This document shows positions 18,851 to 62,744 of a DNA stretch of 64,000 nt, piece by piece. The translations under genes and the position numbers were made by a program. The notes under the pieces were generated by a model that did no database searches, was not told the DNA's origin, and worked only from the letters and a program-made list of their open reading frames with translations. Source of the stretch: Macrostomum lignano. Lineage: Eukaryota. The stretch is from assembly GCA_002269645.1 (NCBI GenBank), contig NIVC01000260.1, forward strand, positions 434,001-498,000, written 5' to 3'. How positions within the stretch are numbered: position 1 is the stretch's first letter; every line of letters begins with the position of its first letter.

Positions 18851-21800
18851 ATGGCTCTGGAACGTACCAGCAACAGCTTCCACTGGGCAGACTACGTCAT
18901 CCTAGTCTTGTCGTTGCTCATTTCGTGCTCAGTGGGGATCTACTTTGCCTTGTCGGGCGGTAAGCAGAAGACAACAGCCGAGTATCTCATGGGAGATCGC
19001 AGTATGAGACTGGTGCCAGTGTCCGTGTCTCTGGTGGCCAGCTTCCTGTCCGCCATCCTCATCCTGGGCCATCCGGCCGAGATCTACCTGAACGGCATTG
19101 GGTTTCACTTTCACCTGATCGGCGCAACCATTGCGTACCTGACGACAGCGTTTCTGTTCGTTGGACTGTTCTATCAGCTGCGAATAACCAGCGCCTTCGA
19201 GGTAACTGGAGGCATTTTTCGATAAAGCTGCTTGTAGTTATTTTCTGCGGTCTGCGACTGCCGCAATTTGATTGCCAGTGACAATTTGACTGTCAGTGAC
19301 AATTGACTGTCAGGTGACAATTCACTGTCAGGTGATAATTCACTGTCAGGTGACAATTCACTGTCAGGTGACAATTCACTGTCAGGTGACAATTCACTGT
19401 CAGGTGACAATTCACTGTCAGGTGACAATTCACTGTCAGGTGATAATTCACTGTCAGGTGACAATTCACTGTCAGGTGACAATTCACTGTCAGTGACAAT
19501 TCACTGTCAGGTGATAATTCACTGTCAGGTGACAATTGACTGTCAGTGACAATTGACTGTCAGTGACAATTGACTGTCAGTGACAATTGACTTTCAGGTG
19601 ACAATTGACTGTCAGTGACAATTGACTGTCAGTGACAATTGACTGTCAGTGGCAATTGACTGTCAGTGACAATTGACTTCAGTGAAATTGACTGTCAGGT
19701 GACAATTGACTGTCAGTGACAATTGACTGTCAGGTGACAATTGACTGTCAGTGACAATTGACTGTCAGTGACAATTGACTGTCAGTGACAATTGACTGTC
19801 AGGTGACAATTGACTGTCAGTGACAATTGACTTTCAGGTGACAATTGACTGTCAGTGACAATTGACTGTCAGTGACAATTGACTTCAGTGAAATTGACTG
19901 TCAGGTGACAATTGACTGTCAGTGACAATTGACTGTCAGGTGACAATTGACTGTCAGTGACAATTGACTGTCAGGTGACAATTGACTGTCAGTGACAATT
20001 GACTGTCAGTGACAATTGACTGTCAGTGACAATTGACTTCAGTGAAATTGACTGTCAGGTGACAATTGACTGTCAGTGACAATTGACTGTCAGGTGACAA
20101 TTGACTGTCAGTGACAATTGACTGTCAGGTGACAATTGACTGTCAGTGACAATTGACTGTCAGTGACAATTGACTGTCAGTGACAATTGACTGTCAGTGA
20201 CAATTGACTGTCAGTGACAATTGACTTTATCCTGTGCCTTTTCGTATGTCACGGATTTCTGCCAGAAACAGTATCGCACTGCTCAAACCAAACCCATCTC
20301 AAACACAAAACCAGTATCTGGAGCAGAGATTCCAATCTAAGCTGGTGCGCTGCATCGGGACCCTCCTGAATTTGGTCATCATGGTAAGTCATAGCGAGTT
20401 GGTACAATTAATAAAATCGAATTTGCTGTACTAACTGATTAAAACAAGATGGATTTCAGATCATGTACGCTGGCAGTGCCATATTTGCACCATGTACAGC
20501 CACTGAGAGAGGTAACAAAATTATTCGGCACCTATTTTATGAATCTATATTAGAGGAATTAAAAACAAAACATGCAAGGACTACTCAAGTAGCATACATA
20601 GGACGCAACACTCGATATCTGTGGTAAATGTTTTGAAGGCAACTTTTCGCCGAAACTACACTACGGAGATAGGAAATATCACGATTTTCAACACTGAAAC
20701 AGTGATTGGGTCTCTTAGCAGTGTCAGAGAAAGTTCTAATCACACTATTCTGTGCCTCACATGCTGCTCTAACGATTTTTCATGTTAAATTGGTCTCGTC
20801 ATTATTTTTAAAGTTTTCTCAAATGAAGCTTTATGAATATCGATAGAGCAATAAGAAAGGCACAGCATATCAAAAGATGAACACTGGATCTGCCTCCTAT
20901 CCAAAGCAATAACAATTTTTATGCTGAAAAAATTAAAACCTCCTATCTCTGTAGTGTATTTATAGATTTCGAGTGTTGCGTCCTTTTACTTAAGTTGTCC
21001 TTGTACATGTGAAAGTCAACAGTCAAGGATGGTGGAGAAGTTAGATGGAGAAGAATGAAGGGAGAAAAGCTCACGGATAGGAAGAGTGCAAGGATGGGGA
21101 AGGAATGGAAAAGTGGACAGTGTGTTCAGAATACAGGGGAGCAAGAGCATCTCCCAGCGGCCCATTCTCCACTGCAACCACTTGCAGTCACGGACAGCGC
21201 AGTCCGTCGCGAGTACGTGATAGCCGCCTGCGGCATAATCGGCACTTTTTACACTCTGCTCGGCGGCATGAAGGCGGTGGTCTGGGTTGATGCCATCCAA
21301 GCTGGCATCATGCTGGCTGGCACTGTGGCTGTTGCTGTCAAGGTGATCAACTACCTGAGTCTCCACGGTCTTTTAGTATTATGACATGAGCAGAGTACGT
21401 TAGAAATGAAGATTGTAACTTGTGAAGATTGTAACTTGTGAAGATTGTAACTTGTGAAGATTGGAACTTGTGAAGATTGGAACTTGTGAAGATTGGAACT
21501 TGTGAAGATTGTAACTTGTGAAGATTGTAACTTGTGAAGATTGTAACTTGTGAAGATTGTAGGTTGTGAAGATTGTAGGTTGTGAAGATTGTAGGTTGTG
21601 AAGATTGGAGCTTGTGAAGATTGTAGGTTGTGAAGATTGGAGCTTGTGAAGATTGTAGGTTGTGAAGATTGGAGCTTGTGAAGATTGGAACTTGTGAAGA
21701 TTGGGGCTTGTAAAGATTGAAGCTTGTGAAGATTGGAGCTTGTGAAGATTGTAGGTTGTGAAGATCGGAGCTTGTGAAGATTGTAGGTTGTGAAGATTGG

Positions 21801-24800
21801 AGCTTGTGAAGATTGTAGGTTGTGAAGATTGAGGCTTGTGAAGATTGGAGCTTGTGAAGATTGAGGCTTGTGAAAATTGGAGCTTGTGAAGATTGAAGCT
21901 TGTGAAGATTGTAACTTGTGAAGATTGTAGCTTGTGAAGATTGTAAGTTGTGAAGATCGGAGCTTGTGAAGATTGTAAGTTGTGAAGATTGGACCTGTGA
22001 AGATTGGGCTTGTGAAGATTGGAGCTTGTGAAGATTGGAGCTTGTGAAGATTGGAGCTTGTGAAGATTGGAGCTTGTGAAGATTGTAACTTGTGAAGATT
22101 GGAGCTTGTGAAGATTGGAGCTTGTGAATATTGGAGCTTGTGAAGATTGTAGCTTGTGAAGATCGGAGCTTGTGAAGATTGGAGCTTGTGAAGATTGTAG
22201 CTTGTGAAGATTGGAGCTTGTGAAGATTGGAACTTGTGAAGATTGGAAATTGTGAAGATTGGGGCTTGTGAAGATTGAAGCTTGTGAAGATTGGGGCCTC
22301 TGAAGTCTCGTGCTTGTAAAGTTTAGAAATTCACCAGCAGATGTCACGAGCATTCTCTTTACAGTTTTCTTTCATATCCCTCAGGCCGTGGTTGATTCAG
22401 GCGGGTTTGGCCAAATGTGGCAGCTGAACATGGACTACGGCAGGCTGCAGTTGCCACCGTTGACTGCGGACCCGAGGGAGCGCCACTCGCTGTGGGGCAT
22501 GATCTTCGGCCAGGCGATGTACTGGCTGATTCAGGTGGCCGTCAGTCAGCCGTCTGTGCAGCGGTACTGCTCACTGCCAAGTCTCCGAGCTGCTAAGTTG
22601 TGAGAACTGATGAGCTCTTTGAGCTTCTTGTCGGTGTCTAAGGCTTGTAGCCCAGTGGTAAGAGCGTCGGGTTCACGACTGGAAGGTCGGGGGTTCGATT
22701 CTCAACCTACTCGGAACAACTTGTGTCTTTAAGCTTAACTCTGCATTGCTTCAGTTCACCCAGCTGTAAAATGGGTGCCAGCATTAGCTGGGGTAATTGA
22801 GGCTGTGTGTGGCGACCCCCAAGCCCCCCAGACCTTGGACTGAACAGCCGCACGCAGCCTTCAGATGCGCCGCGCAATAGCTGCGCCTGAGCTGTCGGTT
22901 GCACATCTGGCACATTGGGACAGGCGTAATCAATTATTATTATTATTAATATTATTATTATTTTATTGTTTCTAAGAATATTTGAAGGCTTGCGATTCAA
23001 GGTTAATGGGATAAAAGAAACAGCCTGTTTATCGGTTTTCTGTGTGGCTGTTTCATTCCTTTAACTACATGGCTGTCTGTCGAAGGAACAATTTCATATT
23101 GAGTTTATAGTCAACAAGTACCTGCGCTTTAACAAATCAATAAGAGCAAGGCTCGCTTGTATTGAAAATCATCACATTATGTAGATAAACTAAATAATCA
23201 AAAACATGCTTCTTAAAACAACCCAGCTCCCTAATAAACGCGCTAACTCCTAAGTAGACTGTCAATAAACACACCTTCTTGATTAGTACAGCTTAATGAT
23301 TACAACAAAATCTAAACACGCCTGAATATAAACACAAATAAATAAGTACACACGTAAATTTAAACACAACAAAATATAAACACATTTGAATATAAACACA
23401 ATTTAAACGCACCTAAAAAGCACAACTCCGTGATAAACAACCCCAGCAACGCCATCCCGCAGGAGCGTGGTGTTCGGCCTCGTCGGCCACTGGATCATGG
23501 TCAGCGTGTGCACCCTGGTGGGGCTGGCGATCTTCGGCCGCTACGCCTCCGTGGCCTGCGACATCCACACCGCAGGCTGGGCGGACACCAACCAGATCGT
23601 CACCTACTACGTGATGGAGCGAATGAGCGTACCCGGATTTCCGGGTTTGTTCACGGCCGCTCTGCTGGCTGCCGCTCTGTCGTCAGTGTCCTCGTCGCTG
23701 AGCTCCGTGTCCACCATCGCCTGGACCGACCTGCTGCGGCCGTACGCGTGCAAGAAGGTGACCGGCGGTGCACCTTGGCAACCCATCTGCTATATTGTTT
23801 ATACTGTTTATACTATATATTGTTTAAAGCCTCCCCTTCCAGCACCAAACCTAAACCAAAGCCTACACCAATATCTACTAGACCTACACCAGAACCTACT
23901 AGACCTACACCAGAACCTACTAGACCTACACCAATATCTACTAGACCTACACCAGAACCTACTAGACCTACACCAATATCTACTAGACCTACACCAGAAC
24001 CTACTAGACCTACACCAGAACCTACTAGACCTACACCAATATCTACTAGACCTACACCAGAACCTACTAGACCTACACCAATATCTACTAGACCTACACC
24101 AGAACCTACTAGACCTACACCAATATCTACTAGACCTACACCAGAACCTACTAGACCTACACCAGAACCTACTAGACCTACACCAGAACCTACTAGACCT
24201 ACACCAGAACCTACTAGACCTACACCAGAACCTACTAGACCTACACCAGAACCTACTAGACCTACACCAGAACCTACTAGACCTACACCAGAACCTACTA
24301 GACCTACACTAGAACCTACTAGACCTACACCAGAACATACTAGACCTACACCAGAACCTACTAGACCTACACCAGAACCTACTAGACCTACACCAATATC
24401 TACTAGACCTACACCAGAACCTACTAGACCTACACCAGAACCTACTAGACCTACACCAGAACCTACTAGACCTACACCAGAACCTACTAGACCTACACCA
24501 GAACCTACTAGACCTACACCAGAACCTACTAGACCTACACTAGAACCTACTAGACCTACACCAGAACATACTAGACCTACACCAGAACCTACTAGACCTA
24601 CACCAGAACCTACTAGACCTACACCAGAACCTACTAGACCTACACCAAAACCCTACTAGACCTACACCAGAACCTACTAGACCTACACCAGAACCTACTA
24701 GACCTACACCAAAACCTACTAGACCTACACCAAAACCTCCCAGCTGCCAGAATCCCGGGCTACACTGGTTGCCAAGTCGCTGGTAGCCGCTGCCGGTCTC

Positions 24801-45600: not shown

Positions 45601-46954
45601 GCGAAGCAATTTGTAGGGCGATTATCGGGGCGATTTTAGGGCGATTATTGTGGAGATCCAAGGCAATTATTGGGGCGATCCAAAGTGATTATTGACACGA
45701 TTTTTGGTCTCCAGCTCTGTCACTATACCTCTGTTACCTCGTCATTCACTTAAGTCAAGCCTGCAACTTGCAATCGCTGGATTCATCAAAAGTATGCCGG
45801 TGTCGGTAAAAGAGAAAATTTTTCAGGCCTCATTACATAGCGTAGGGTAGTCTCAGGCCATGAGTGTCGCCTAGAAGAGTCAATTTGAGTCGATTATTGG
45901 GGCGATATTGTCTGCTACTCTAAAACGACTCTGGGGACAATTTGCCAGACAAGCCTCGTATTTGGCATGCAAATGCTTGAGGTGTTTCAATCGAAACCAC
46001 ATCGCACCATTCTGTATACTAATCAGGTAATTATCAGTGTGCTTACACAGAATTCTCGGAGCACAACTGACACTGCCCATTGGACATTGTGGTGAGCAGT
46101 TCGGGTGCTAGGTTGGCACCGGCAACAGCGCAGGTCTGGCCAAGCCTAGTCAGAATGTCAGCACAAGCGGAGGTCAGCTCATCGAATTGCAGAGCTCTGG
46201 GCGCTAGCAGGGCGACCCCGCCGCACAGCCAGACAGTCACGTGATGCGGGAGACGGCCCCAGCGTTGCCGAGTCTGCGGCTGCTGATGCTGCTGCGTTTG
46301 GTGCAGCTTAACGAAACTTCGTAGTGTGGGAGAAGTCATTACATAGTTTAGTTATTAAAGCTATATTCTGTAAGCTTGGTATAAATCATAAATTACCTGT
46401 CTATCAGTGAGTCAAAAATCATAACTGCACATGTGCATCAGTCAGTCATAAATCATAATTTCACATGTCTATCAGTTAGTCATAAATCATAACTGCACCT
46501 ATCAGTCAGTCATAAATCATAACTGTACCTGCTCATCAGTCAGTCATAAATCAAAACTGCACCTGTGCATCAGTCAGTCATAAATCATAGTTCCACCTAT
46601 CAGCTAGTCAAAAATCATAAATCAGGTGCACTTGACTTATTTTATAGTGAGATTAGTGAAAAAAATTCACACTTACCTATGCCAATAGTAGACCTGCCTT
46701 AAATCTTCATCAGTTTTAACTGTCATTAAGTGACCTTCCTTGTCAATTAGTATCACACTTGGATTATTAGGTGGCAATGTAAAACCTATTACTGAACTCA
46801 ATAAATCAGCCAATTGCAACAGGCCAAAACTGTGAGGAATAAGTGCAATTGAGCTGTTGCAAGATGCTGAATAGAACTGAATTGACAGATGGTTTGGCAC
46901 TGATATATTGAATTGTAGTTTGTTCTCATCCAGAATTGTGAAGCTAAATGTCAT
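40038..46954 (-). CDS. MAP2K5: MAP2K5/MEK5-like kinase with N-terminal PB1 domain (449 aa in the simplest model)
   Basis: Exons 46954-46677, 44428-44222, 43026-42764, 42116-41675, 40197-40038 (1350 nt, phase-consistent). PB1-like [17 protein letters not shown]; GFGQFGTV; VALK; [11 protein letters not shown]; GLAYLW..IVHRDVK; DLG; YMSPER; DVWGLG. The N-terminal splicing is uncertain. Confidence 0.78.
40245..41570 (+). repeat. 26-bp CTAG-rich minisatellite TGATCTAATCTAGTGTCTAGTCTAGA in the last kinase intron
   Basis: About 50 units, three CTAG per unit. Confidence 0.96.
42141..42740 (+). repeat. (CAGA)n microsatellite in a kinase intron
   Basis: Direct reading. Confidence 0.97.
43083..44215 (+). 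repeat. Degenerate CT-rich repeat (CCACTCTCCCATCT) in a kinase intron
   Basis: Direct reading. Confidence 0.92.
44545..45700 (+). repeat. 12/13-bp minisatellite GGGGCGATTATT
   Basis: About 90 degenerate units. Confidence 0.95.
46047..46339 (-). CDS. Candidate alternative first (or internal) exon of the MEK5-like gene
   Basis: GC-rich open frame from ATG 46339 to a GTAAGC donor after 46047. Phase 2, compatible with acceptors at 44524/44521/44428. Confidence 0.45.
46380..46625 (+). repeat. Degenerate ~31-bp repeat ATCAGTCAGTCATAAATCATAACTGCACCT
   Basis: About 7 units. Confidence 0.8.
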
Positions 46955-48022
46955 GCCTAAAATGGGATTAATAGGGTATATTTATATTTAAAACAATAAA
47001 GCAAACAATAGGATAAAATTTAGACTACTATAGAAAGTTAGTCATAGTTTATTCAAAAATTAGCAATTTGTGTAAGTTAAAAAATTTAAAACATTTATTT
47101 ATATGCTTTGCAATATAGAATATAGTTGATTATATTTCTATGCAAACTTTTTTCTTCATATGGCATTTTAGCTTTAAAAATGTCCCATAAGCCTAGCTAA
47201 AACTATGAAAATAAAGCTTTTGCTTTTGATTTTTGATTTTATATAGAAATTCCATACTAGTGTGCCAAGGGCTTTTTTCAAGTGGATATTAATATATATT
47301 ATTAACAATAACAATAAAAGCAAGAACTAGAAGGTATTTAAAGAAATAAAAATAAAACAATGATAAAGCATCATTTTTAATTACCTTTAAAAACACAAAT
47401 AAAAACTTATTAATAATAGACACTCAATCTTCCATACATATTTAGTACCAAAGTAGGCCCTAACTTGTCACCAAAATAAATGTTTTTTAAAATGACTATT
47501 ACCAAACTGACTAATACTAAAGTATCTGGTTCCTACTATAAAGGCTTAGACTTTAATGAAAACTAAATATGGTAGGTTCTGGTTTTATTAATACTAATAT
47601 TAATAGTATACCTATGCATTATGAAGCCCTATTAGAGTACAAGTTTAGATCCTGCAAATAAGTGACACAGGTCAATAGTTAGGAAGATTTCAGAGCAAAA
47701 AAGGGTTGAACTTGAATGTGTGCTATATCAGTACATTCTGGTGCAATAGTAGAAAAAGAAAAATATCTAACATAGTAAAGTGTAGGGCTAACAAAAATAG
47801 TTCCAATTCATGGTGCAAATACAAATAAACTTATTCTAGTATTAGGCCCTAGCATACTATAGATAAGCACTATAGGCATAGGTTTATTTATAATTTATAA
47901 ATTATATGCATCATGCTTAGATGCTATAGATGTTTATCACAAAATTATAGCACCACAATAGCTTTTGCCAAGGTGCAATAGATAGCAGACTTTAACTTTT
48001 AAAATAAATTATAACTCTAAGA

Positions 48023-56489: not shown

Positions 56490-56725
56490 ATCTGACAGTC
56501 ACAGATAGAAATGGCTGACATCCTGGCAATTGACATTAGATATCTGACAGTCAGGCTTAGATGTGTCTGACAGTCAGGCTTAGATGTGTCTGACAGTCAG
56601 GCTTAGATGTGTCTGACAGTCAGGCTTAGATGTGTCTGACAGTCAGGCTTAGATGTGTCTGACAGTCAGGCTTAGATGTGTCTGACAGTCAGCCTTAGAT
56701 GTGTCTGACAGTCAGGATTAGATGT
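56490..56725 (+). repeat. 23-bp minisatellite TCTGACAGTCAGGCTTAGATGTG
   Basis: About 9 units downstream of the G6Pase stop codon. Confidence 0.93.
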
Positions 56726-56800
56726 GGCACTAAGAGTCTCACTATAGGCCAAGGCAAGCAGGAGCTCTAATAAATGATCGCCAGGCATTCAACAATCGAT

Positions 56801-57928
56801 CTAGCGCTCCTTCTTAGCAGCGGACCGTTTACCGGCAGGTTTGGCAGCAGCCGTGGCGGTACCGTGTCTGGCAGCGTGTGGCCTGACGGCGTGGTGACTG
56901 CCGCGGCCTGCGCTAGCCAGCCGACGCGAGTCCAGCTTGGCTGCCAGCACCGGCAGCACAATAGTGACAATCAGCGGCATCAGGGCGTACTTGAATGCGG
57001 CAAACAGATAAGTCTGTAGATCGGAGAAGCCTGGCTTCGGCTGGAATCGCTTCTCCAACAATACGCAGGCGCACATTGACAAGAATCCTGCGAAGCACTT
57101 AGTCACGGTTCTACTAGGAGCCGGAACAGGCAGCAGGCTGGCCAGGAAGCTGGAGAAAGCGGCGCCAAGGATGGCACCAATATCGCGGTGGATGCTGAAT
57201 AGCGGCGTAGTGTCAATGCTAACCCACTCCGAGCTGGCGCAGTGCCGTTCGGCCAGCCGGATGGACCAGTCGGGATCGAGGCCCAGCTGACGCAGACAGT
57301 GACTAACACCCAGGGAGCTGCTGAACATTAGGAAGGCCAACAATAGCAGAGCAAACGGGCGAAGTATCTGGCTACCCATTTTCACGGCCACAATTGACAG
57401 CAGACAGCCGGTGATCACTCCGCCAACAGCCTGATGCGGAAAGTGAGTTGCTAAGAAACAGCGCGACACGCCCAGGGCGGTGATGCCAGCAAAGTAGGCG
57501 TATCTGACAGCCAACCTGGACTTGGTTGGCAAGCTCTGGCTGGCGTACAGCACAGGGATGTACCAGGAGGCCGCTGCCACCATGCAGTGACCGGACGGAG
57601 ACCCCGGGCCAGTCTCGCAGGTCTGAGGAAACTGGGCCAGAGTGAGATTCACTTGGCGCAGCCGCTCGCCAACCCACCAATAGGGCCGCTCTCCGTGCAG
57701 AGCCCATTTTAACAAGCCATTGAGCCACTCGGAGAAAGCGGCCGACCACAATACCGTGAGGCCCAGGTGCGAGTTCAATGCGTAGCACAATGGGAAAGCA
57801 ATTATAAATGCGCTGACGGGATGCCCAAAATCAGATAGCAGCATTAGAGGCTGGGCCAGCGGCATCAAGCCGGTCTGTAGGCCCGAGACGGCTCGAGCGC
57901 CGGACAGATGAAGCGAATCGAATACAGA
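56801..57928 (-). CDS. G6PC: Glucose-6-phosphatase (PAP2 family), single coding exon, start codon unresolved
   Basis: KWALHGERP (Kx6RP), GPGSPSGH, SRCFLATHFPHQ, TTPLFSIHRDIG, C-terminal KKER (KKXX-type ER retrieval signal). Confidence 0.92.
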   Translation of the reverse strand, partial: SVFDSLHLSGARAVSGLQTGLMPLAQPLMLLSDFGHPVSAFIIAFPLCYALNSHLGLTVLWSAAFSEWLNGLLKWALHGERPYWWVGERLRQVNLTLAQFPQTCETGPGSPSGHCMVAAASWYIPVLYASQSLPTKSRLAVRYAYFAGITALGVSRCFLATHFPHQAVGGVITGCLLSIVAVKMGSQILRPFALLLLAFLMFSSSLGVSHCLRQLGLDPDWSIRLAERHCASSEWVSIDTTPLFSIHRDIGAILGAAFSSFLASLLPVPAPSRTVTKCFAGFLSMCACVLLEKRFQPKPGFSDLQTYLFAAFKYALMPLIVTIVLPVLAAKLDSRRLASAGRGSHHAVRPHAARHGTATAAAKPAGKRSAAKKER

Positions 57929-57999
57929 CTCCAGCAAGGTTAATTATTCGGCTTGGTTTTAGCGAATCTTTTGCCTAATTAGGGCAGTTGGTACTGCCG

Positions 58000-58330
58000 G
58001 CAAACAGTAATGAGCACTCCCCTGACCCCTGAACAGACACACGCTCACACAGGGTGTACAACCAGTCCTGCCTGCTCAAGGTTTGTGTCTCTTCTCAGTT
58101 TTCTTCTCTCACCTCTCTTCTTATCTCTCCTGTCATCTCCCTTCTCCTCTCTTTTCCCTCCTCTTTCCTTTCTCCTCCTTTTCCTCTATTTTCTTCCTCC
58201 TTTCCCTTCTCTCTCCTTTCTCCTATTTCTCTTCTCTATTCTCTCTCCTCTCTCCCTTCCTCTGGCCCACAGTCATGCGCCAGGTTCTCGATCTGGCCCT
58301 TGAGGTAAAAAGTCTGCCAACCCTGATCTA
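58000..58330 (-). mobile_element. Degenerate SINE-like remnant split by a CT-rich tract (58095-58260)
   Basis: CACACGCTCACACAGGGTGTACA and ACTCCCCTGA match the SINE body at 54520-54590. Confidence 0.5.
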
Positions 58331-58819: not shown

Positions 58820-59841
58820 TCAAATAGCAACGCCTTTGGTGATAATGATGTTAGCATACTGGGCCAGCTCCCCCGTATGGACAACACAGTAGGCCCTCTC
58901 CGCTGCTCTGTAAAACTGTTCGCGAGGCAATAGTTGAACCCGACTTTTGCCGCTGCTGCTGGTCAATAAGCTAAAGTGCGGGTGCACTTTTGCATAGTCC
59001 GACCAGATTGGCGGGTTGGGACTGAATTTGTCAGCGTCTGATGGCTCAACCTGCCAATTGAAATATGATGCTTAATGCCTCCACATACTGTCTCACCACA
59101 CCCGTTCAAAATGTATTTCCCACCCTCTCCGTCTCCCCACCCCTCAACGTCTCATCACCCATCTCCGTCTCCCCACCCTCTCCGTCTCCCCACCCCTCTC
59201 CGTCTCCCCATCCCTCTCCGTCTCCCCACCCTCTCCATCTCCCCATCCCTCTCCGTCTCCCCACCCTCTCCGTCTCCCCACCCCTCTCCGTCTCCCCATC
59301 CCTCTCCGTCTCCCCACCCCTCTCCGTCTCCCCACCCATCTCCGTCTCCCCACCCTCTCCGTCTCCCCACCCTCTCCGTCTCCCCACCCTCTCCGTCTTC
59401 CCATCCCTCTCCGTCTCCCCACCCCTCTCCGTCTTCCCATCCCTCTCAATCTCCCCACCCCTCTGTCTCCCCATCCTTCTCCGTCTTCTCACCCCTCTCC
59501 ATCTCCCCACCCCTCTCCATCTCTCCACCCTTCTGCATCTCCCCGCGCCCACTGTGCCAGTCTCCCTCAGCCTCAACATAACCACCAAGCAAGCAACGAA
59601 CCTGCATGAGTGCGATGGGACTCTCAATATAGGTATCAATAGGCAGCACAGACATGATGGCTTCCAATAGTTGAGGCATTTCGACACCATCATAGCGAAT
59701 GACAGAACATCCAGCCCGCCGGGCAATACTGTGGCTAGGAAAATGGGCATCAGCCAGTACCAGAGTGTCGCCATGGCCCATCTCTGCTAGGCACTTCAGC
59801 AGTTCAGGCGACAACAGACTGGGTATGCCTAACAGAGGCAT
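58820..59841 (-). CDS. FUOM: L-fucose mutarotase (RbsD/FucU family), 2 exons, 156 aa
   Basis: Exons 59841-59602 and 59050-58820, phase 0. LSPELLKCLAEMGHGDTLVLADAHFP; REQFYRAAERAYCVVHTGELAQYANIIITKGV. Confidence 0.95.
59120..59545 (+). repeat. 18/19-bp repeat CCACCCTCTCCGTCTCCC in the FUOM intron
   Basis: About 22 units. Confidence 0.94.
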
Positions 59842-62744
59842 CTGAGCTGGAAGATGCAGTAAAATAAAACTCTAAAGAATAAGCAGTGACCCCAAGTGTT
59901 TGGCACAATGGGTTGTGCTATATGCTATTTTTCACTTCTAGCACAATTTTTCTGACAAGTTCCATGACTAATAAACATGCATATTGCACACATTAGGCAC
60001 ATGTCAGGAGTTGCTGTCAATGCATTTGCAGTGGAAACAAGGGTCTTTTCACCATGAAATAATCCTGTTTGGACAACTCTTTACACTATTAAAAATTTAT
60101 CTCCTAGCTATTGCCATACTCTACACATTGCAAGTTCACAAGAGCAAGTAATAGACAACAGAATTGGTTTTGAGATTCAACAAAGTTGATATATAAATAT
60201 TTCAATCATTAGCTAAGCATTTTATACTATATAATACTATATAAACAAAGCTTTGAAGCTCATTGCATCAAAGAAACAACCAAGTCATTAATGGTAGGTA
60301 AAACCAAGCAATGAAAAATGATTTATAATTGTGAATAACCAAAACTTAATAATTTATGCCAAAAGAGGTCTAATAGTTTATAGCATGCCTTTACAATTTG
60401 CATGATTATGGCTCTAAGAGCAATCAGACAAATGATCATACATGCGCAACTTTGGGATTCACCCGGCCGTTTCTATTGGCAACACACATATGTAAGTCGC
60501 TATTGGACAGAACAGTAGTCACGTGACTGCTCTCACGTTGCGCCCAAGGTTGCGCCCAAGCAAGCAAATGATATGCTATTCTACTTATAATGACATTAGA
60601 AAACTGGGTTTGGAAAAAAAACAATAAAAATTAGACATGGGATAAAGGAGAACAAGCAAGGAAATAATTACTTTTTGACCAAAAATTCTTACCTATAAAA
60701 GAAACCTTAAGCAAAATTAACATAATTTTGGGTAAATGGTGGGAATAAATAAGACTATTATTAAGACAAAATGCCTTATCATTTACTTAGTATAGTAAAA
60801 TAGACATTAGCCTATGTCTATTTTTTGGGTGGGTATTATTGCAACTTACCTTAGCTTGGCCCACACTTTTCAAGGTTACTAGTACACTAGAAATTTCTAT
60901 TCTAAAGATTTTGGCATAACAATTTATTATCTTGGCATACCACTTTAAGCTCACGTAAATTTTTTGCACACCAACTTATGCTTACAAAAACTTTAAAACT
61001 TTGATGAATAAAAAATTACACATTGCAATAATTTATCTTTTTTAGAATGTAGGCCTATATGCTAGGTCTATGAGAATTACTTACACACAAATTGTTTGCA
61101 AAAGATTTGCCCATTGAGATTTGCTTACTAAGCTTTTCTTGCCAAGATTTGCCTGCAATACATTTTGCCTTTGAACAAATTGCCTATAGAGATATTTTTG
61201 CAATGCAATTTTCCTGCAAGTGAATTAATTGCCTGCCAAGTTTTTTCTCACTGAGGTTTGCCTATAATACTTTTAGCTATATAGCATATTTTTCAGCTAG
61301 ATTCTATTTGTATTGCCCCTCTCTAAAAATATGCATTTGATATGCAGTTATTTCCAAAATGTTTTGATTGGATAAATCTCTTTATTAAGACTTACTAAAC
61401 ATTAGGGAGGCAATACAAACAAAATCTACTGCATGGAAATCCATTGCAAGAAAAAAGCATTGTGGACAAACCTTGGCAGACAATTTATTTGTGGGCAAAT
61501 TGCATTGTAGGCAAATCTCAGCAGGCAATTCTTATTAGAAATCAAGGTATCACATTAGAAATTAAAACCAAGGTCTAAGACAAGACAACTTGGGAACAAT
61601 GGTGCAATTATTAGGAATTAAAGCATATTATTATTATTGGGGATTGGGTATATAGAAATATTTTACTAATAATGATAAACAAAAAATAATAGTATAAAAA
61701 TGTTCAAAAGTTGAGTCAAAAATATAATTTTTTTGTAAAGTTAGGCCTATACTAATAAGACTAAGAATAATATGCAAACTAGGGCCTAGGCCCTTACATA
61801 CATCTTAGACCTAGGCTTATTAATATTAGTCTAATATAACTTAAGAGCATTGTACTGTACAGGCCTACTATAGGCCCTATTTCTATAGCTTAAGCCATGC
61901 ACAACAATACATAACTTATGTCATAAGAAGCCATTGCCAATGATAAATTGCAAATTGGTATAAAATTATGACCCACACTTTTGTTCCAGATAGAAAAGCA
62001 TTTGTTCAACTTTACCCCCACTAATAGTTTAATAGCAAAAGATTTTAAAACATCTATCTATAGACCTAGGCCTATACATCTATTATTGGCACCATCTGCA
62101 GTGAAGCATAGTGACAAATATAAAATATGCTAATCGCTAGGCCTAGAGGGACAGTCAGTGGGACTCGTGACGCCAGTTCCCTTTTACACTCATGACTCAC
62201 CCCTTTCAAAAGGGTAAACTCAGGCCTATAATAAAATAAATTAGTGCTACGTGCTACATGTAACTGTTTACATGGTTCAAATTGCTGTTGGTTCGGCCGT
62301 TTTGGCGACAGATTTCAGATAACCTTTGGCAATAACTGATGTAAGTTTCGCCATTTGGGCAACATTGTTATATATGAGGTGGGGGCGGAGAAAAGTTATG
62401 GGAAAACGGCGGCAGGCAGCGGTATAGTCTCTCTGTGCTGTACTGTACCTACCTAGGTTTACACCGAGCGAGAGCAAAGAGCTCGAGTAGTAGTAGTAGT
62501 AAGTTGGCTCAGGCAAGAAGCCTGTTTGGCCAATTATATTTCTGTGTATTTTAAGATTACTTCAGGTCCAGGAACAGAAGGTAATATTTTAGGATAAGTT
62601 ATTTACTACGATTACAAGTACGAGTTTTGCAATATGGTATTTGAAAGGATGCGTAAATTTTGTTGACGAAACTATGGACGACTAGCGAGGTGAAAGAAAG
62701 AGCAAGGAGTTAAAAAAGTATTGCGTGAAATTAAGTTCTATAAT

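What the first reader, a model, noticed from the sequence alone, without database searches (positions are those of the whole stretch)
57865..57945. Glucose-6-phosphatase with a conserved N-terminus but no ATG: start codon probably donated by the flatworm spliced leader
Seen: the frame is closed by TAA just upstream of 57937 and its first ATG is at 57865. The 21 codons before that ATG encode SVFDSLHLSGARAVSGLQ, matching the conserved G6PC N-terminus (D-x-LH-x2-G-x5-LQ), so they are probably translated. A phase-0 acceptor with a branch-like TTAAC (TTAACCTTGCTGGAG|TCT, AG at 57930-57929) lies directly before them. Established: platyhelminth spliced leaders end in AUG, which can act as the initiator. 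Inference: SL trans-splicing at 57928 gives M-SVFDSLH..., a 376-aa enzyme whose translation depends on trans-splicing. The acceptor is GAG rather than YAG, which weakens the case.
Basis: partly seen in the sequence, partly recalled or inferred. Interest (0 to 1): 0.8.

Follow-up and report, generated by a model that had tools for sequence, protein, structure and literature searches.

The report
Flatworm G6Pase gene lacking start codon
A glucose-6-phosphatase gene of the flatworm Macrostomum lignano has no start codon of its own and most likely borrows the AUG at the end of the trans-spliced leader. This trick is already documented in flatworms, so it is a new example and not a new mechanism.

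Summary
On the minus strand an intronless PAP2/glucose-6-phosphatase ORF runs 57928..56801. It is closed upstream by TAA (57946-57944), and its first in-frame ATG is at 57865. The 21 codons before that ATG encode the conserved N-terminal helix of the family (18.4 bits against a profile of homologue N-termini; 0 of 20,000 shuffles reach this).

The window is Macrostomum lignano (Mlig_3_7, NIVC01000260.1). This flatworm's published 35-nt spliced leader ends in ATG. AG 57930-57929 is the only acceptor at which the leader's ATG opens the full 376-aa ORF.

All three genomic copies lack an ATG and are annotated as 5'-partial. The diverged homeologue's GenBank CDS (PAA93593.1) begins exactly after this AG, and no model has an upstream exon. 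Window versus homeologue gives dN/dS = 0.086, so the gene is under constraint.

I found no SL-junction read, so the splice event is inferred and not shown. The acceptor is a weak GAG in the window; the homeologue has TTGCAG|GAG.

The mechanism was established in Schistosoma (Cheng et al. 2006). Verdict: interpretation supported (about 0.7), a new member of a known kind, of modest interest.

The parts
56801..57928 (-). Intronless glucose-6-phosphatase coding exon: 375 codons (SVFDSLH...KKER) plus TAG. With a donated Met the product is 376 aa.
   Evidence: The PAP2 signature is present: K-x6-RP (KWALHGERP), PSGH, and SR-x5-H-x3-Q (SRCFLATHFPHQ).
57929..57943 (-). Putative trans-splice acceptor region TTAACCTTGCTGGAG, with AG at 57930-57929 in phase 0 with the ORF.
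   Evidence: It is the only AG upstream of the conserved N-terminus at which SL-ATG opens the full ORF. The homeologue L002 has TTGCAG|GAG here.
57944..57946 (-). In-frame TAA closing the reading frame upstream.
   Evidence: It is TAC in L002, where the next in-frame stop lies 18 nt further upstream and there is still no ATG.
57866..57928 (-). 21 codons before the first genomic ATG. They encode the conserved luminal amphipathic helix LH1, including the invariant Gln (human Q20).
57863..57865 (-). First in-frame genomic ATG (rival start). It would give a 354-aa protein without LH1.
   Evidence: The context is gcttgATGc: pyrimidine at -3, C at +4.
57932..57937 (-). Near-cognate TTG and CTG codons (rival non-AUG starts). 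They would be removed if the SL is spliced at 57928.
   Evidence: CTG is CAG in L002; TTG is conserved.
57876..57881 (-). CTACAG, made by the conserved Leu-Gln codons. It matches the published [T/C]TNCAG trans-acceptor motif and is in frame. SL-ATG here would give a 358-aa product lacking LH1.
58269..58276 (-). It is conserved in L002 but has a weak donor, GTGGGC.
58107..58136 (-). The best-scoring alternative cis 5' exon: ATG..GAG|GTGAGA (MTGEIRRE), inside a GA-rich simple repeat. It is not conserved in L002.
58101..58263 (-). GA-rich (minus strand) low-complexity tract in the putative outron or intergenic region.
58820..59841 (-). Upstream same-strand fucose mutarotase (FucU) gene: exon 1 at 59841-59602, intron at 59601-59051, exon 2 at 59050-58820. 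Its stop lies about 890 nt from the G6Pase acceptor.

Best explanation
The gene is the glucose-6-phosphatase of Macrostomum lignano, and it has lost its own initiator codon.

Proposed mechanism:
- The pre-mRNA starts somewhere upstream. It either has its own promoter in the roughly 890-nt spacer or is co-transcribed with the fucose mutarotase gene.
- The pre-mRNA is trans-spliced at AG 57930-57929 to the 35-nt spliced leader, whose last three bases are AUG.
- The junction ...UUGCAUG|UCUGUAUUC puts that AUG in phase with the ORF.
- Scanning ribosomes therefore start on the leader's AUG and make a 376-aa enzyme, M-SVFDSLHLSG..., with an intact N-terminal luminal helix.

Shown here: the organism, the SL sequence, the absence of a genomic ATG in all copies, the phase-0 AG, the conservation and constraint of the N-terminus, and gene-model 5' ends at or near the AG.

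Inferred: that the SL is actually joined there, and that the SL AUG is the codon used.
For: - Organism and SL. Searches place the window in Mlig_3_7. The SL ends in ATG and 30-39% of genes are trans-spliced.
- Acceptor. AG 57930-57929 is the only upstream AG that gives a full-length SL-ORF.
- Copies. All three copies lack an in-frame ATG between the upstream stop and the conserved N-terminus. No other M. lignano G6Pase appeared in the protein search.
- Gene models. The GenBank CDS of homeologue L002 (PAA93593.1, 'partial') starts exactly at TCT after the AG. The window and L001 models start +15 and +12 nt downstream, and none extends upstream or has a 5' exon. The annotation pipeline cuts transcripts at SL-read peaks and maps reads end-to-end, which explains one exact and two ragged starts.
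- Homeologue acceptor. L002 has a consensus TTGCAG| acceptor 3 nt upstream, also in frame.
- Selection. Window versus L002 gives 20 synonymous and 5 non-synonymous differences, dN/dS 0.086 (0.021 in the core). The first 21 codons have 0 non-synonymous changes (P = 0.05 if neutral at the synonymous rate).
- N-terminus. It is family-specific and predicted as a confident helix (pLDDT above 90). It contains the invariant Gln equal to human Q20, which bridges LH1, TM4 and LH2; Q20R abolishes function.
- Precedent. In S. mansoni the SL AUG is in frame in 28% of trans-spliced mRNAs and is required by more than 40 cDNAs (Cheng 2006). Outron acceptors are more permissive than cis acceptors.
Against: - No SL-containing read, EST or cDNA for this gene could be reached.
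- The window's acceptor is GAG, whereas the enriched M. lignano trans-acceptor motif is [T/C]TNCAG (44% of sites).
- The window's own gene model starts 15 nt downstream of the AG, not at it. A 5'-partial model can also simply be truncated: the FucU models in two copies start 9 nt after a genuine ATG.
- A consensus-like, in-frame CTACAG| lies 52 nt downstream and could compete.
- At the upstream non-coding substitution rate, the lack of non-synonymous change in 21 codons is not significant (P = 0.2).
- The SL AUG has a weak Kozak context (U at -3, U at +4).
Confidence: 0.7

Rival explanations
1. Translation starts at the first genomic ATG (57865). The mRNA is either not trans-spliced (a start site just upstream, for example downstream of the TATA-like AATAATTAA at 57949-57941) or is trans-spliced at another site, such as CTACAG| at 57876. 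The product is a 354-358-aa protein without the N-terminal helix, and the upstream 21 codons are a relic.
For: - The ATG exists and is conserved.
- The window and L001 models begin at 57913-57918, compatible with a start site there.
- CTACAG matches the published acceptor motif.
Against: - It would delete LH1 and the invariant Gln (human Q20; Q20R, M5R and T16A are pathogenic).
- The 21 codons keep every family-conserved residue and show 0 non-synonymous changes between homeologues.
- All models include sequence upstream of 57876.
- The ATG context is poor (pyrimidine at -3).
Confidence: 0.1
2. A short cis-spliced 5' exon supplies the ATG and is joined to the same acceptor at 57928. The candidates are ATGACT|GTGGGC at 58276 and ATG..GAG|GTGAGA at 58136.
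For: - Both candidates are in phase.
- The 58276 candidate is conserved in L002.
- The 58136 candidate has a donor matching GT[G/A]AG.
Against: - None of the three RNA-seq-guided gene models contains such an exon. All are 5'-partial.
- The 58276 donor is weak.
- The 58136 candidate lies in a simple repeat and is destroyed in L002, where there is no ATG and a stop comes before the donor.
Confidence: 0.08
3. Non-AUG initiation at TTG (57937) or CTG (57934) on an mRNA whose leader is not removed.
For: - Both codons are in frame after the TAA.
- TTG is conserved in all copies and has A at -3.
- Near-cognate initiation is documented in SL organisms.
Against: - CTG is CAG in L002.
- No gene model includes these codons.
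- Near-cognate starts are inefficient compared with an AUG supplied by the SL.
Confidence: 0.07
4. The gene is a decaying or non-functional copy whose start codon has been lost.
For: There is no ATG, and GenBank marks every copy partial.
Against: - dN/dS is 0.086 between homeologues, and 4 of the 5 replacements are in the disordered C-tail.
- The catalytic motif is intact.
- No other G6Pase of this species was found.
- RNA-seq-based models exist for all copies.
Confidence: 0.03

Closest known systems
Schistosoma mansoni mRNAs that use the spliced leader's 3'-terminal AUG as initiator (Cheng, Cohen, Ndegwa & Davis, J Biol Chem 2006; cited in PMC9851317, PMC12582326, PMC5832876)
   Same: The SL ends in AUG. 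The acceptor is in phase with an ORF that has no AUG of its own ahead of conserved N-terminal residues. Translation then depends on trans-splicing.
   Different: The species and clade differ: a free-living macrostomorph, not a parasitic neodermatan. The gene differs. Here the junction and the initiation are inferred, not demonstrated. The acceptor in the window copy is GAG.
slORFs: ORFs created by SL addition in nematodes, Oikopleura and trypanosomes (slORFfinder, PMC9851317)
   Same: A start codon is provided by the leader sequence.
   Different: Those mostly use NUG codons inside the SL and often create new or alternative ORFs. Here the canonical conserved ORF itself appears to depend on the SL AUG.
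G6PC family enzymes with a genomic start codon (human G6PC1, PDB 9j7v; mollusc and cestode G6Pases P0002, P0010, P0028, P0077)
   Same: The fold is the same (TM 0.81-0.86). So are the PAP2 catalytic motif, the N-terminal LH1 helix and the invariant Gln.
   Different: Those proteins start M-D-x-L-H from a genomic ATG. The M. lignano gene has V/F at that position, no ATG, and is intronless.
M. lignano operons resolved by SL trans-splicing (PMC8629364)
   Same: A same-strand upstream gene (FucU) ends about 890 nt away, about 730 nt after subtracting the simple repeat. This is under the published 1-kb criterion if the downstream gene is trans-spliced.
   Different: No polycistronic transcript is shown. 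GenBank gives the two genes different name prefixes, but that prefix only labels a cluster of similar transcripts, so it says nothing for or against co-transcription.

Membership tests
Flatworm mRNAs initiated on the spliced-leader AUG | The organism performs SL trans-splicing with an SL that ends in AUG. | tested here: met
   The window is M. lignano Mlig_3_7. The SL is ...TTATTGCATG.
Flatworm mRNAs initiated on the spliced-leader AUG | An AG acceptor in phase 0 with the ORF, with no stop between the junction and the conserved coding sequence. | tested here: met
   AG 57930-57929 gives SL-ATG + a 375-codon ORF. It is the only such AG. The same is true in L001 and L002.
Flatworm mRNAs initiated on the spliced-leader AUG | No genomic in-frame AUG upstream of conserved N-terminal residues. 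| tested here: met
Flatworm mRNAs initiated on the spliced-leader AUG | Transcripts carrying the SL joined at that acceptor. | not testable with these tools
   The evidence is only indirect: the GenBank CDS of L002 starts exactly after the AG, and the annotation pipeline cuts at SL-read peaks. No reads or cDNAs were reachable.
Flatworm mRNAs initiated on the spliced-leader AUG | Translation actually begins at the SL AUG. | not testable with these tools
   This needs Ribo-seq, N-terminal proteomics or a reporter.
Glucose-6-phosphatase catalytic subunit (PAP2 superfamily) | The signature K-x6-RP / PSGH / SR-x5-H-x3-(D/Q). | tested here: met
   KWALHGERP, PSGH and SRCFLATHFPHQ are in the translation. 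The motif definition comes from PMC11789071. These residues are invariant in A3.
Glucose-6-phosphatase catalytic subunit (PAP2 superfamily) | Full-length nine-TM G6PC fold, including the N-terminal luminal helix. | tested here: met
   phmmer E = 6e-45 to 9j7v over residues 5-347. AF2 pLDDT 88.4. Foldseek TM 0.81/0.86 to 9j7u.
Glucose-6-phosphatase catalytic subunit (PAP2 superfamily) | Hydrolysis of glucose-6-phosphate. | not testable with these tools
   An enzyme assay is needed.
M. lignano SL-resolved operon | Adjacent same-strand genes less than 1 kb apart (repeat-adjusted), with the downstream gene trans-spliced. | tested here: inconclusive
   The distance criterion is met: about 890 nt, including a 163-nt simple repeat. 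Trans-splicing of the downstream gene is the point at issue, and no polycistronic RNA has been seen.

The most novel reading that the evidence does not exclude
The only glucose-6-phosphatase of M. lignano has transferred its start codon to the spliced leader in every genomic copy, so the enzyme can be made only after trans-splicing.

The copies differ in how this works. Two use a non-consensus GAG acceptor. The homeologue has a CAG/GAG tandem acceptor that would give M-E-S... and/or M-S... N-termini.

The neighbouring fucose mutarotase gene has its genomic ATG directly abutting an acceptor, which would give SL-AUG-AUG. This may be the intermediate evolutionary state, and the two genes may form an operon.
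Probability: 0.3. Interest if true: 0.4.

Novelty: new member of a known kind. Interest (0 to 1): 0.27.

Why it matters
- Annotation. In GenBank all three copies are 'hypothetical protein, partial'. If the SL supplies the Met, these are complete genes, and many other 'partial' M. lignano CDSs are probably complete too. A rule that prepends the SL ATG at annotated trans-splice sites would repair them.
- Biology. This is an example outside the parasitic flatworms in which a conserved metabolic enzyme depends on trans-splicing for translation. M. lignano is transgenic-tractable, so the dependence on the SL AUG, and the use of a weak GAG acceptor, could be tested directly.
- Limits. It does not open a new mechanism.

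Tried and rejected
Searches for direct RNA evidence all led nowhere:
- Supplements of PMC8629364 (none held), PMC5730564, PMC5173321, PMC12732829 and PMC12896417 do not mention the gene.
- Full-text searches for Mlig010597 and for Macrostomum + glucose-6-phosphatase gave 0 papers.
- An exact-match scan of metagenome contigs for the exon start gave 0 hits.
- A look-up of the ATG-57865 product gave no record.
- The 90% cluster holds only the three genome-derived proteins and no transcript-derived member.
- Wasik et al. 2015 is not held.

Other dead ends:
- No orthologue from another Macrostomum species is in the protein collection; the best non-self hit is 37% identical. The 'missing ATG in related flatworms' test could therefore be done only on the within-genome homeologue.
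- A search with the FucU first exon did not return the M. lignano proteins. They were recovered by reconstructing the spliced CDS instead.
- The gene-name prefixes turned out to be similarity clusters, not transcription units, so they say nothing about an operon.
- Look-ups of two other window ORFs, to calibrate annotation starts, found nothing.
- The bacterial promoter/terminator scan is irrelevant for a eukaryote.
- No SL RNA gene and no Rfam family is in the window.

Self-correction: I first took the 75-kb contig (L001) to be the window. One search shows the window is identical to L003 (NIVC01000260.1). An apparent duplication of FucU exon 1 was an artefact of that wrong mapping.

Full report
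**What is in the sequence**

On the minus strand an uninterrupted reading frame runs from just after a TAA at 57946-57944 to a TAG at 56803-56801. Its first ATG is at 57865-57863. Between the TAA and that ATG lie the codons TTA ACC TTG CTG GAG and then 21 codons, TCT..TTG (57928-57866), encoding SVFDSLHLSGARAVSGLQTGL. TCT to the stop is 375 codons, so a donated Met gives 376 aa.

**What the ORF encodes**

The product is a glucose-6-phosphatase catalytic subunit.
- Pfam PAP2, E = 6e-17.
- About 100 G6PC hits, the best named ones from molluscs at about 37% identity.
- phmmer E = 6e-45 to the cryo-EM structure of human G6PC1, aligned from human residue 5.
- An AlphaFold model with pLDDT 88.4 and pTM 0.84, whose best PDB match is G6PC1 at TM 0.81/0.86.
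- An intact K-x6-RP / PSGH / SR-x5-H-x3-Q signature (motif definition in PMC11789071).

**Is the N-terminal resemblance real?**

Yes. In alignments of 17 and 28 homologues, the Gln of 'LQ' is invariant and the Gly of 'LHxxG' nearly so. The homologues' initiator Met aligns with V/F of SVFDSLH, and the Bulinus protein starts MFDSLHLWG.

A profile of the homologues' N-termini scores the 21-residue peptide at 18.4 bits. None of 20,000 shuffles exceeds 12.1, and none of 5,799 stop-free 21-mers from the rest of the window exceeds 6.2.

The segment is modelled as a confident helix (pLDDT 91-97). In human G6PC1 it is the amphipathic luminal helix LH1. Q20, the residue aligned with the invariant Gln here, bridges LH1, TM4 and LH2. 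M5R, T16A and Q20R cause GSD-Ia (PMC11789071 and PMC12264158). A protein started at 57865 would lack all of this.

**Organism**

The window is base-for-base identical to NIVC01000260.1 of assembly GCA_002269645.1. This is the Mlig_3_7 assembly of Macrostomum lignano (PMC5730564), and the sister-copy proteins are named M. lignano in GenBank.

M. lignano trans-splices 30-39% of its genes to a single leader, CGGTCTCTTACTGCGAAGACTCAATTTATTGCATG, which ends in ATG (PMC8629364, PMC5730564, PMC5173321).

**Comparison of the genomic copies**

The assembly holds three copies.
- The window.
- A near-identical duplicate on a 75-kb contig (L001). It has 0 differences in the CDS and none for 1,009 nt upstream.
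- A diverged homeologue (L002).

Window versus L002 shows 20 synonymous and 5 non-synonymous differences: pS 0.069, dN/dS 0.086, and 0.021 outside the disordered C-tail. The gene is therefore under purifying selection and is not a relic.

None of the copies has an in-frame ATG ahead of the conserved N-terminus, and no other M. lignano G6Pase turned up. In L002 the TAA is TAC, and CTGGAG is CAGGAG. That copy therefore carries TTGCAG|, a perfect match to the published trans-acceptor motif [T/C]TNCAG, 3 nt upstream of the GAG and also in frame.

In the first 21 codons there is one synonymous change and no replacement. This is unlikely under neutrality at the synonymous rate (P = 0.05) but not at the lower upstream non-coding rate (P = 0.2), so this particular test is weak.

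**Where could the leader's AUG work?**

I joined ATG after every AG from 58150 to 57860. Only AG 57930-57929 gives the full ORF; every other upstream AG gives 2-48 codons. One downstream AG is also in frame: CTACAG| at 57881-57876, made by the Leu-Gln codons. It would give a 358-aa product without LH1.

**Indirect transcript evidence**

The GenBank annotation was built from RNA-seq by a pipeline that trims SL-containing reads, maps them, and cuts transcripts at the resulting peaks. ORFs come from TransDecoder, and ordinary reads were mapped end-to-end.
- All three G6Pase CDSs are 5'-partial.
- The homeologue's CDS (PAA93593.1, BOX15_Mlig010597g1) starts with SVFD, on the first base after the AG.
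- L001 starts 12 nt downstream, and the window's own model starts 15 nt downstream.
- None reaches upstream of the AG, and none has a 5' exon.

This is what is expected if the mature mRNA begins at 57928 and SL-bearing reads are lost from end-to-end mapping.

The neighbouring fucose mutarotase gene shows the same pattern. One copy starts exactly at its ATG, which directly follows ctcag|, and the two others are 5'-partial, starting 9 nt later.

The caveat is that ragged partial models also occur through plain truncation. An exact coincidence with an AG has a chance probability of roughly the AG dinucleotide frequency. The evidence is good but not decisive.

**Rivals**

1. Initiation at 57865. 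This conflicts with the conservation and function of LH1.
2. A cis-spliced ATG exon. A better donor, ATG..GAG|GTGAGA (58136-58107), sits in a simple repeat and is destroyed in the homeologue. No gene model supports either.
3. TTG/CTG initiation on an unspliced leader. CTG is not conserved, and no model includes these codons.
4. A dead gene. This is contradicted by dN/dS.

The weak points of the favoured model are as follows.
- The acceptor in the window is GAG, although outron acceptors are known to be permissive in S. mansoni (PMC5832876).
- The TTAAC lies only about 11 nt from the AG.
- No junction read is available.

**Comparison with what is known**

All reported flatworm SLs end in AUG. 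Cheng et al. (2006) showed that this AUG serves as an initiator. It is in frame in 28% of trans-spliced S. mansoni mRNAs and is required by more than 40 cDNAs (as summarised in PMC9851317 and PMC12582326).

The M. lignano papers I could read describe the SL, the acceptor motif and operons but do not discuss SL-AUG-initiated ORFs. No held paper mentions this gene. This is therefore a new example of a known mechanism, in a free-living early-branching flatworm, and it explains why GenBank calls these proteins 'partial'.

By the published distance rule (under 1 kb, repeat-adjusted), FucU and G6Pase would count as an operon if G6Pase is trans-spliced. No polycistronic RNA has been shown.

**Verdict**

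The novelty is a new member of a known kind, and the interest is modest (0.27).

Noticed in passing
window 59839-59843 (minus strand); L002:3366; L001:6908: The ATG of the fucose mutarotase (FucU) gene sits immediately after an acceptor-like ctcag|. Two of its three annotated copies are 5'-partial, starting 9 nt after the ATG. This suggests the gene is trans-spliced there too, which would put the SL AUG and the gene's AUG in tandem and in frame. The L002 copy has CAA instead of CAG.
   Followed up: partly
window 56543-56726: A 23-nt tandem repeat (TCTGACAGTCAGGCTTAGATGTG) lies just downstream of the G6Pase stop. Its copy number differs between copies: 8 in the window, about 23 in the near-identical 75-kb contig, and 2 in the homeologue.
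   Followed up: partly
window 59119-59544: An 18-nt repeat array (CCCACCCCTCTCCGTCTC, about 24 copies) lies inside the FucU intron. It creates long spurious ORFs on both strands, such as 59065..59670 (+) and 59106..59774 (-).
   Followed up: partly
window 57876-57881 (minus strand): The conserved Leu-Gln codons spell CTACAG, a perfect match to the published M. lignano trans-splice acceptor motif, and they are in frame. This is a possible source of an N-terminally truncated isoform.
   Followed up: no
window 46952-46960 (minus strand): The annotated protein kinase gene (571 aa) starts at ATG 46954, preceded by ttttag|GC. If the SL were spliced there, its AUG would open a 2-codon uORF (AUG GCA UGA) overlapping the real start.
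   Followed up: no
whole window versus L001/L004 (NIVC01003824.1): A 75-kb contig of the same assembly duplicates this FucU-G6Pase-FABP-kinase region almost exactly. The G6Pase CDS has 0 differences, and the contigs differ mainly in repeat copy number and intron length. It is either an assembly haplotig or a very recent duplication.
   Followed up: partly
window 56801-57928: The G6Pase coding region is a single exon. From my own knowledge, not tested here, vertebrate G6PC genes are split by introns. The last roughly 30 residues are Ala/Lys/Arg-rich, predicted disordered (pLDDT below 50), and hold 4 of the 5 amino-acid differences between homeologues.
   Followed up: partly
window 21400-22353 (minus strand) and 23430-24659 (+): Long repetitive ORFs give nominal Pfam hits (Motilin_ghrelin, herpesvirus gp350 C-terminal) with no individually significant stretch. 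These are most likely low-complexity artefacts.
   Followed up: no
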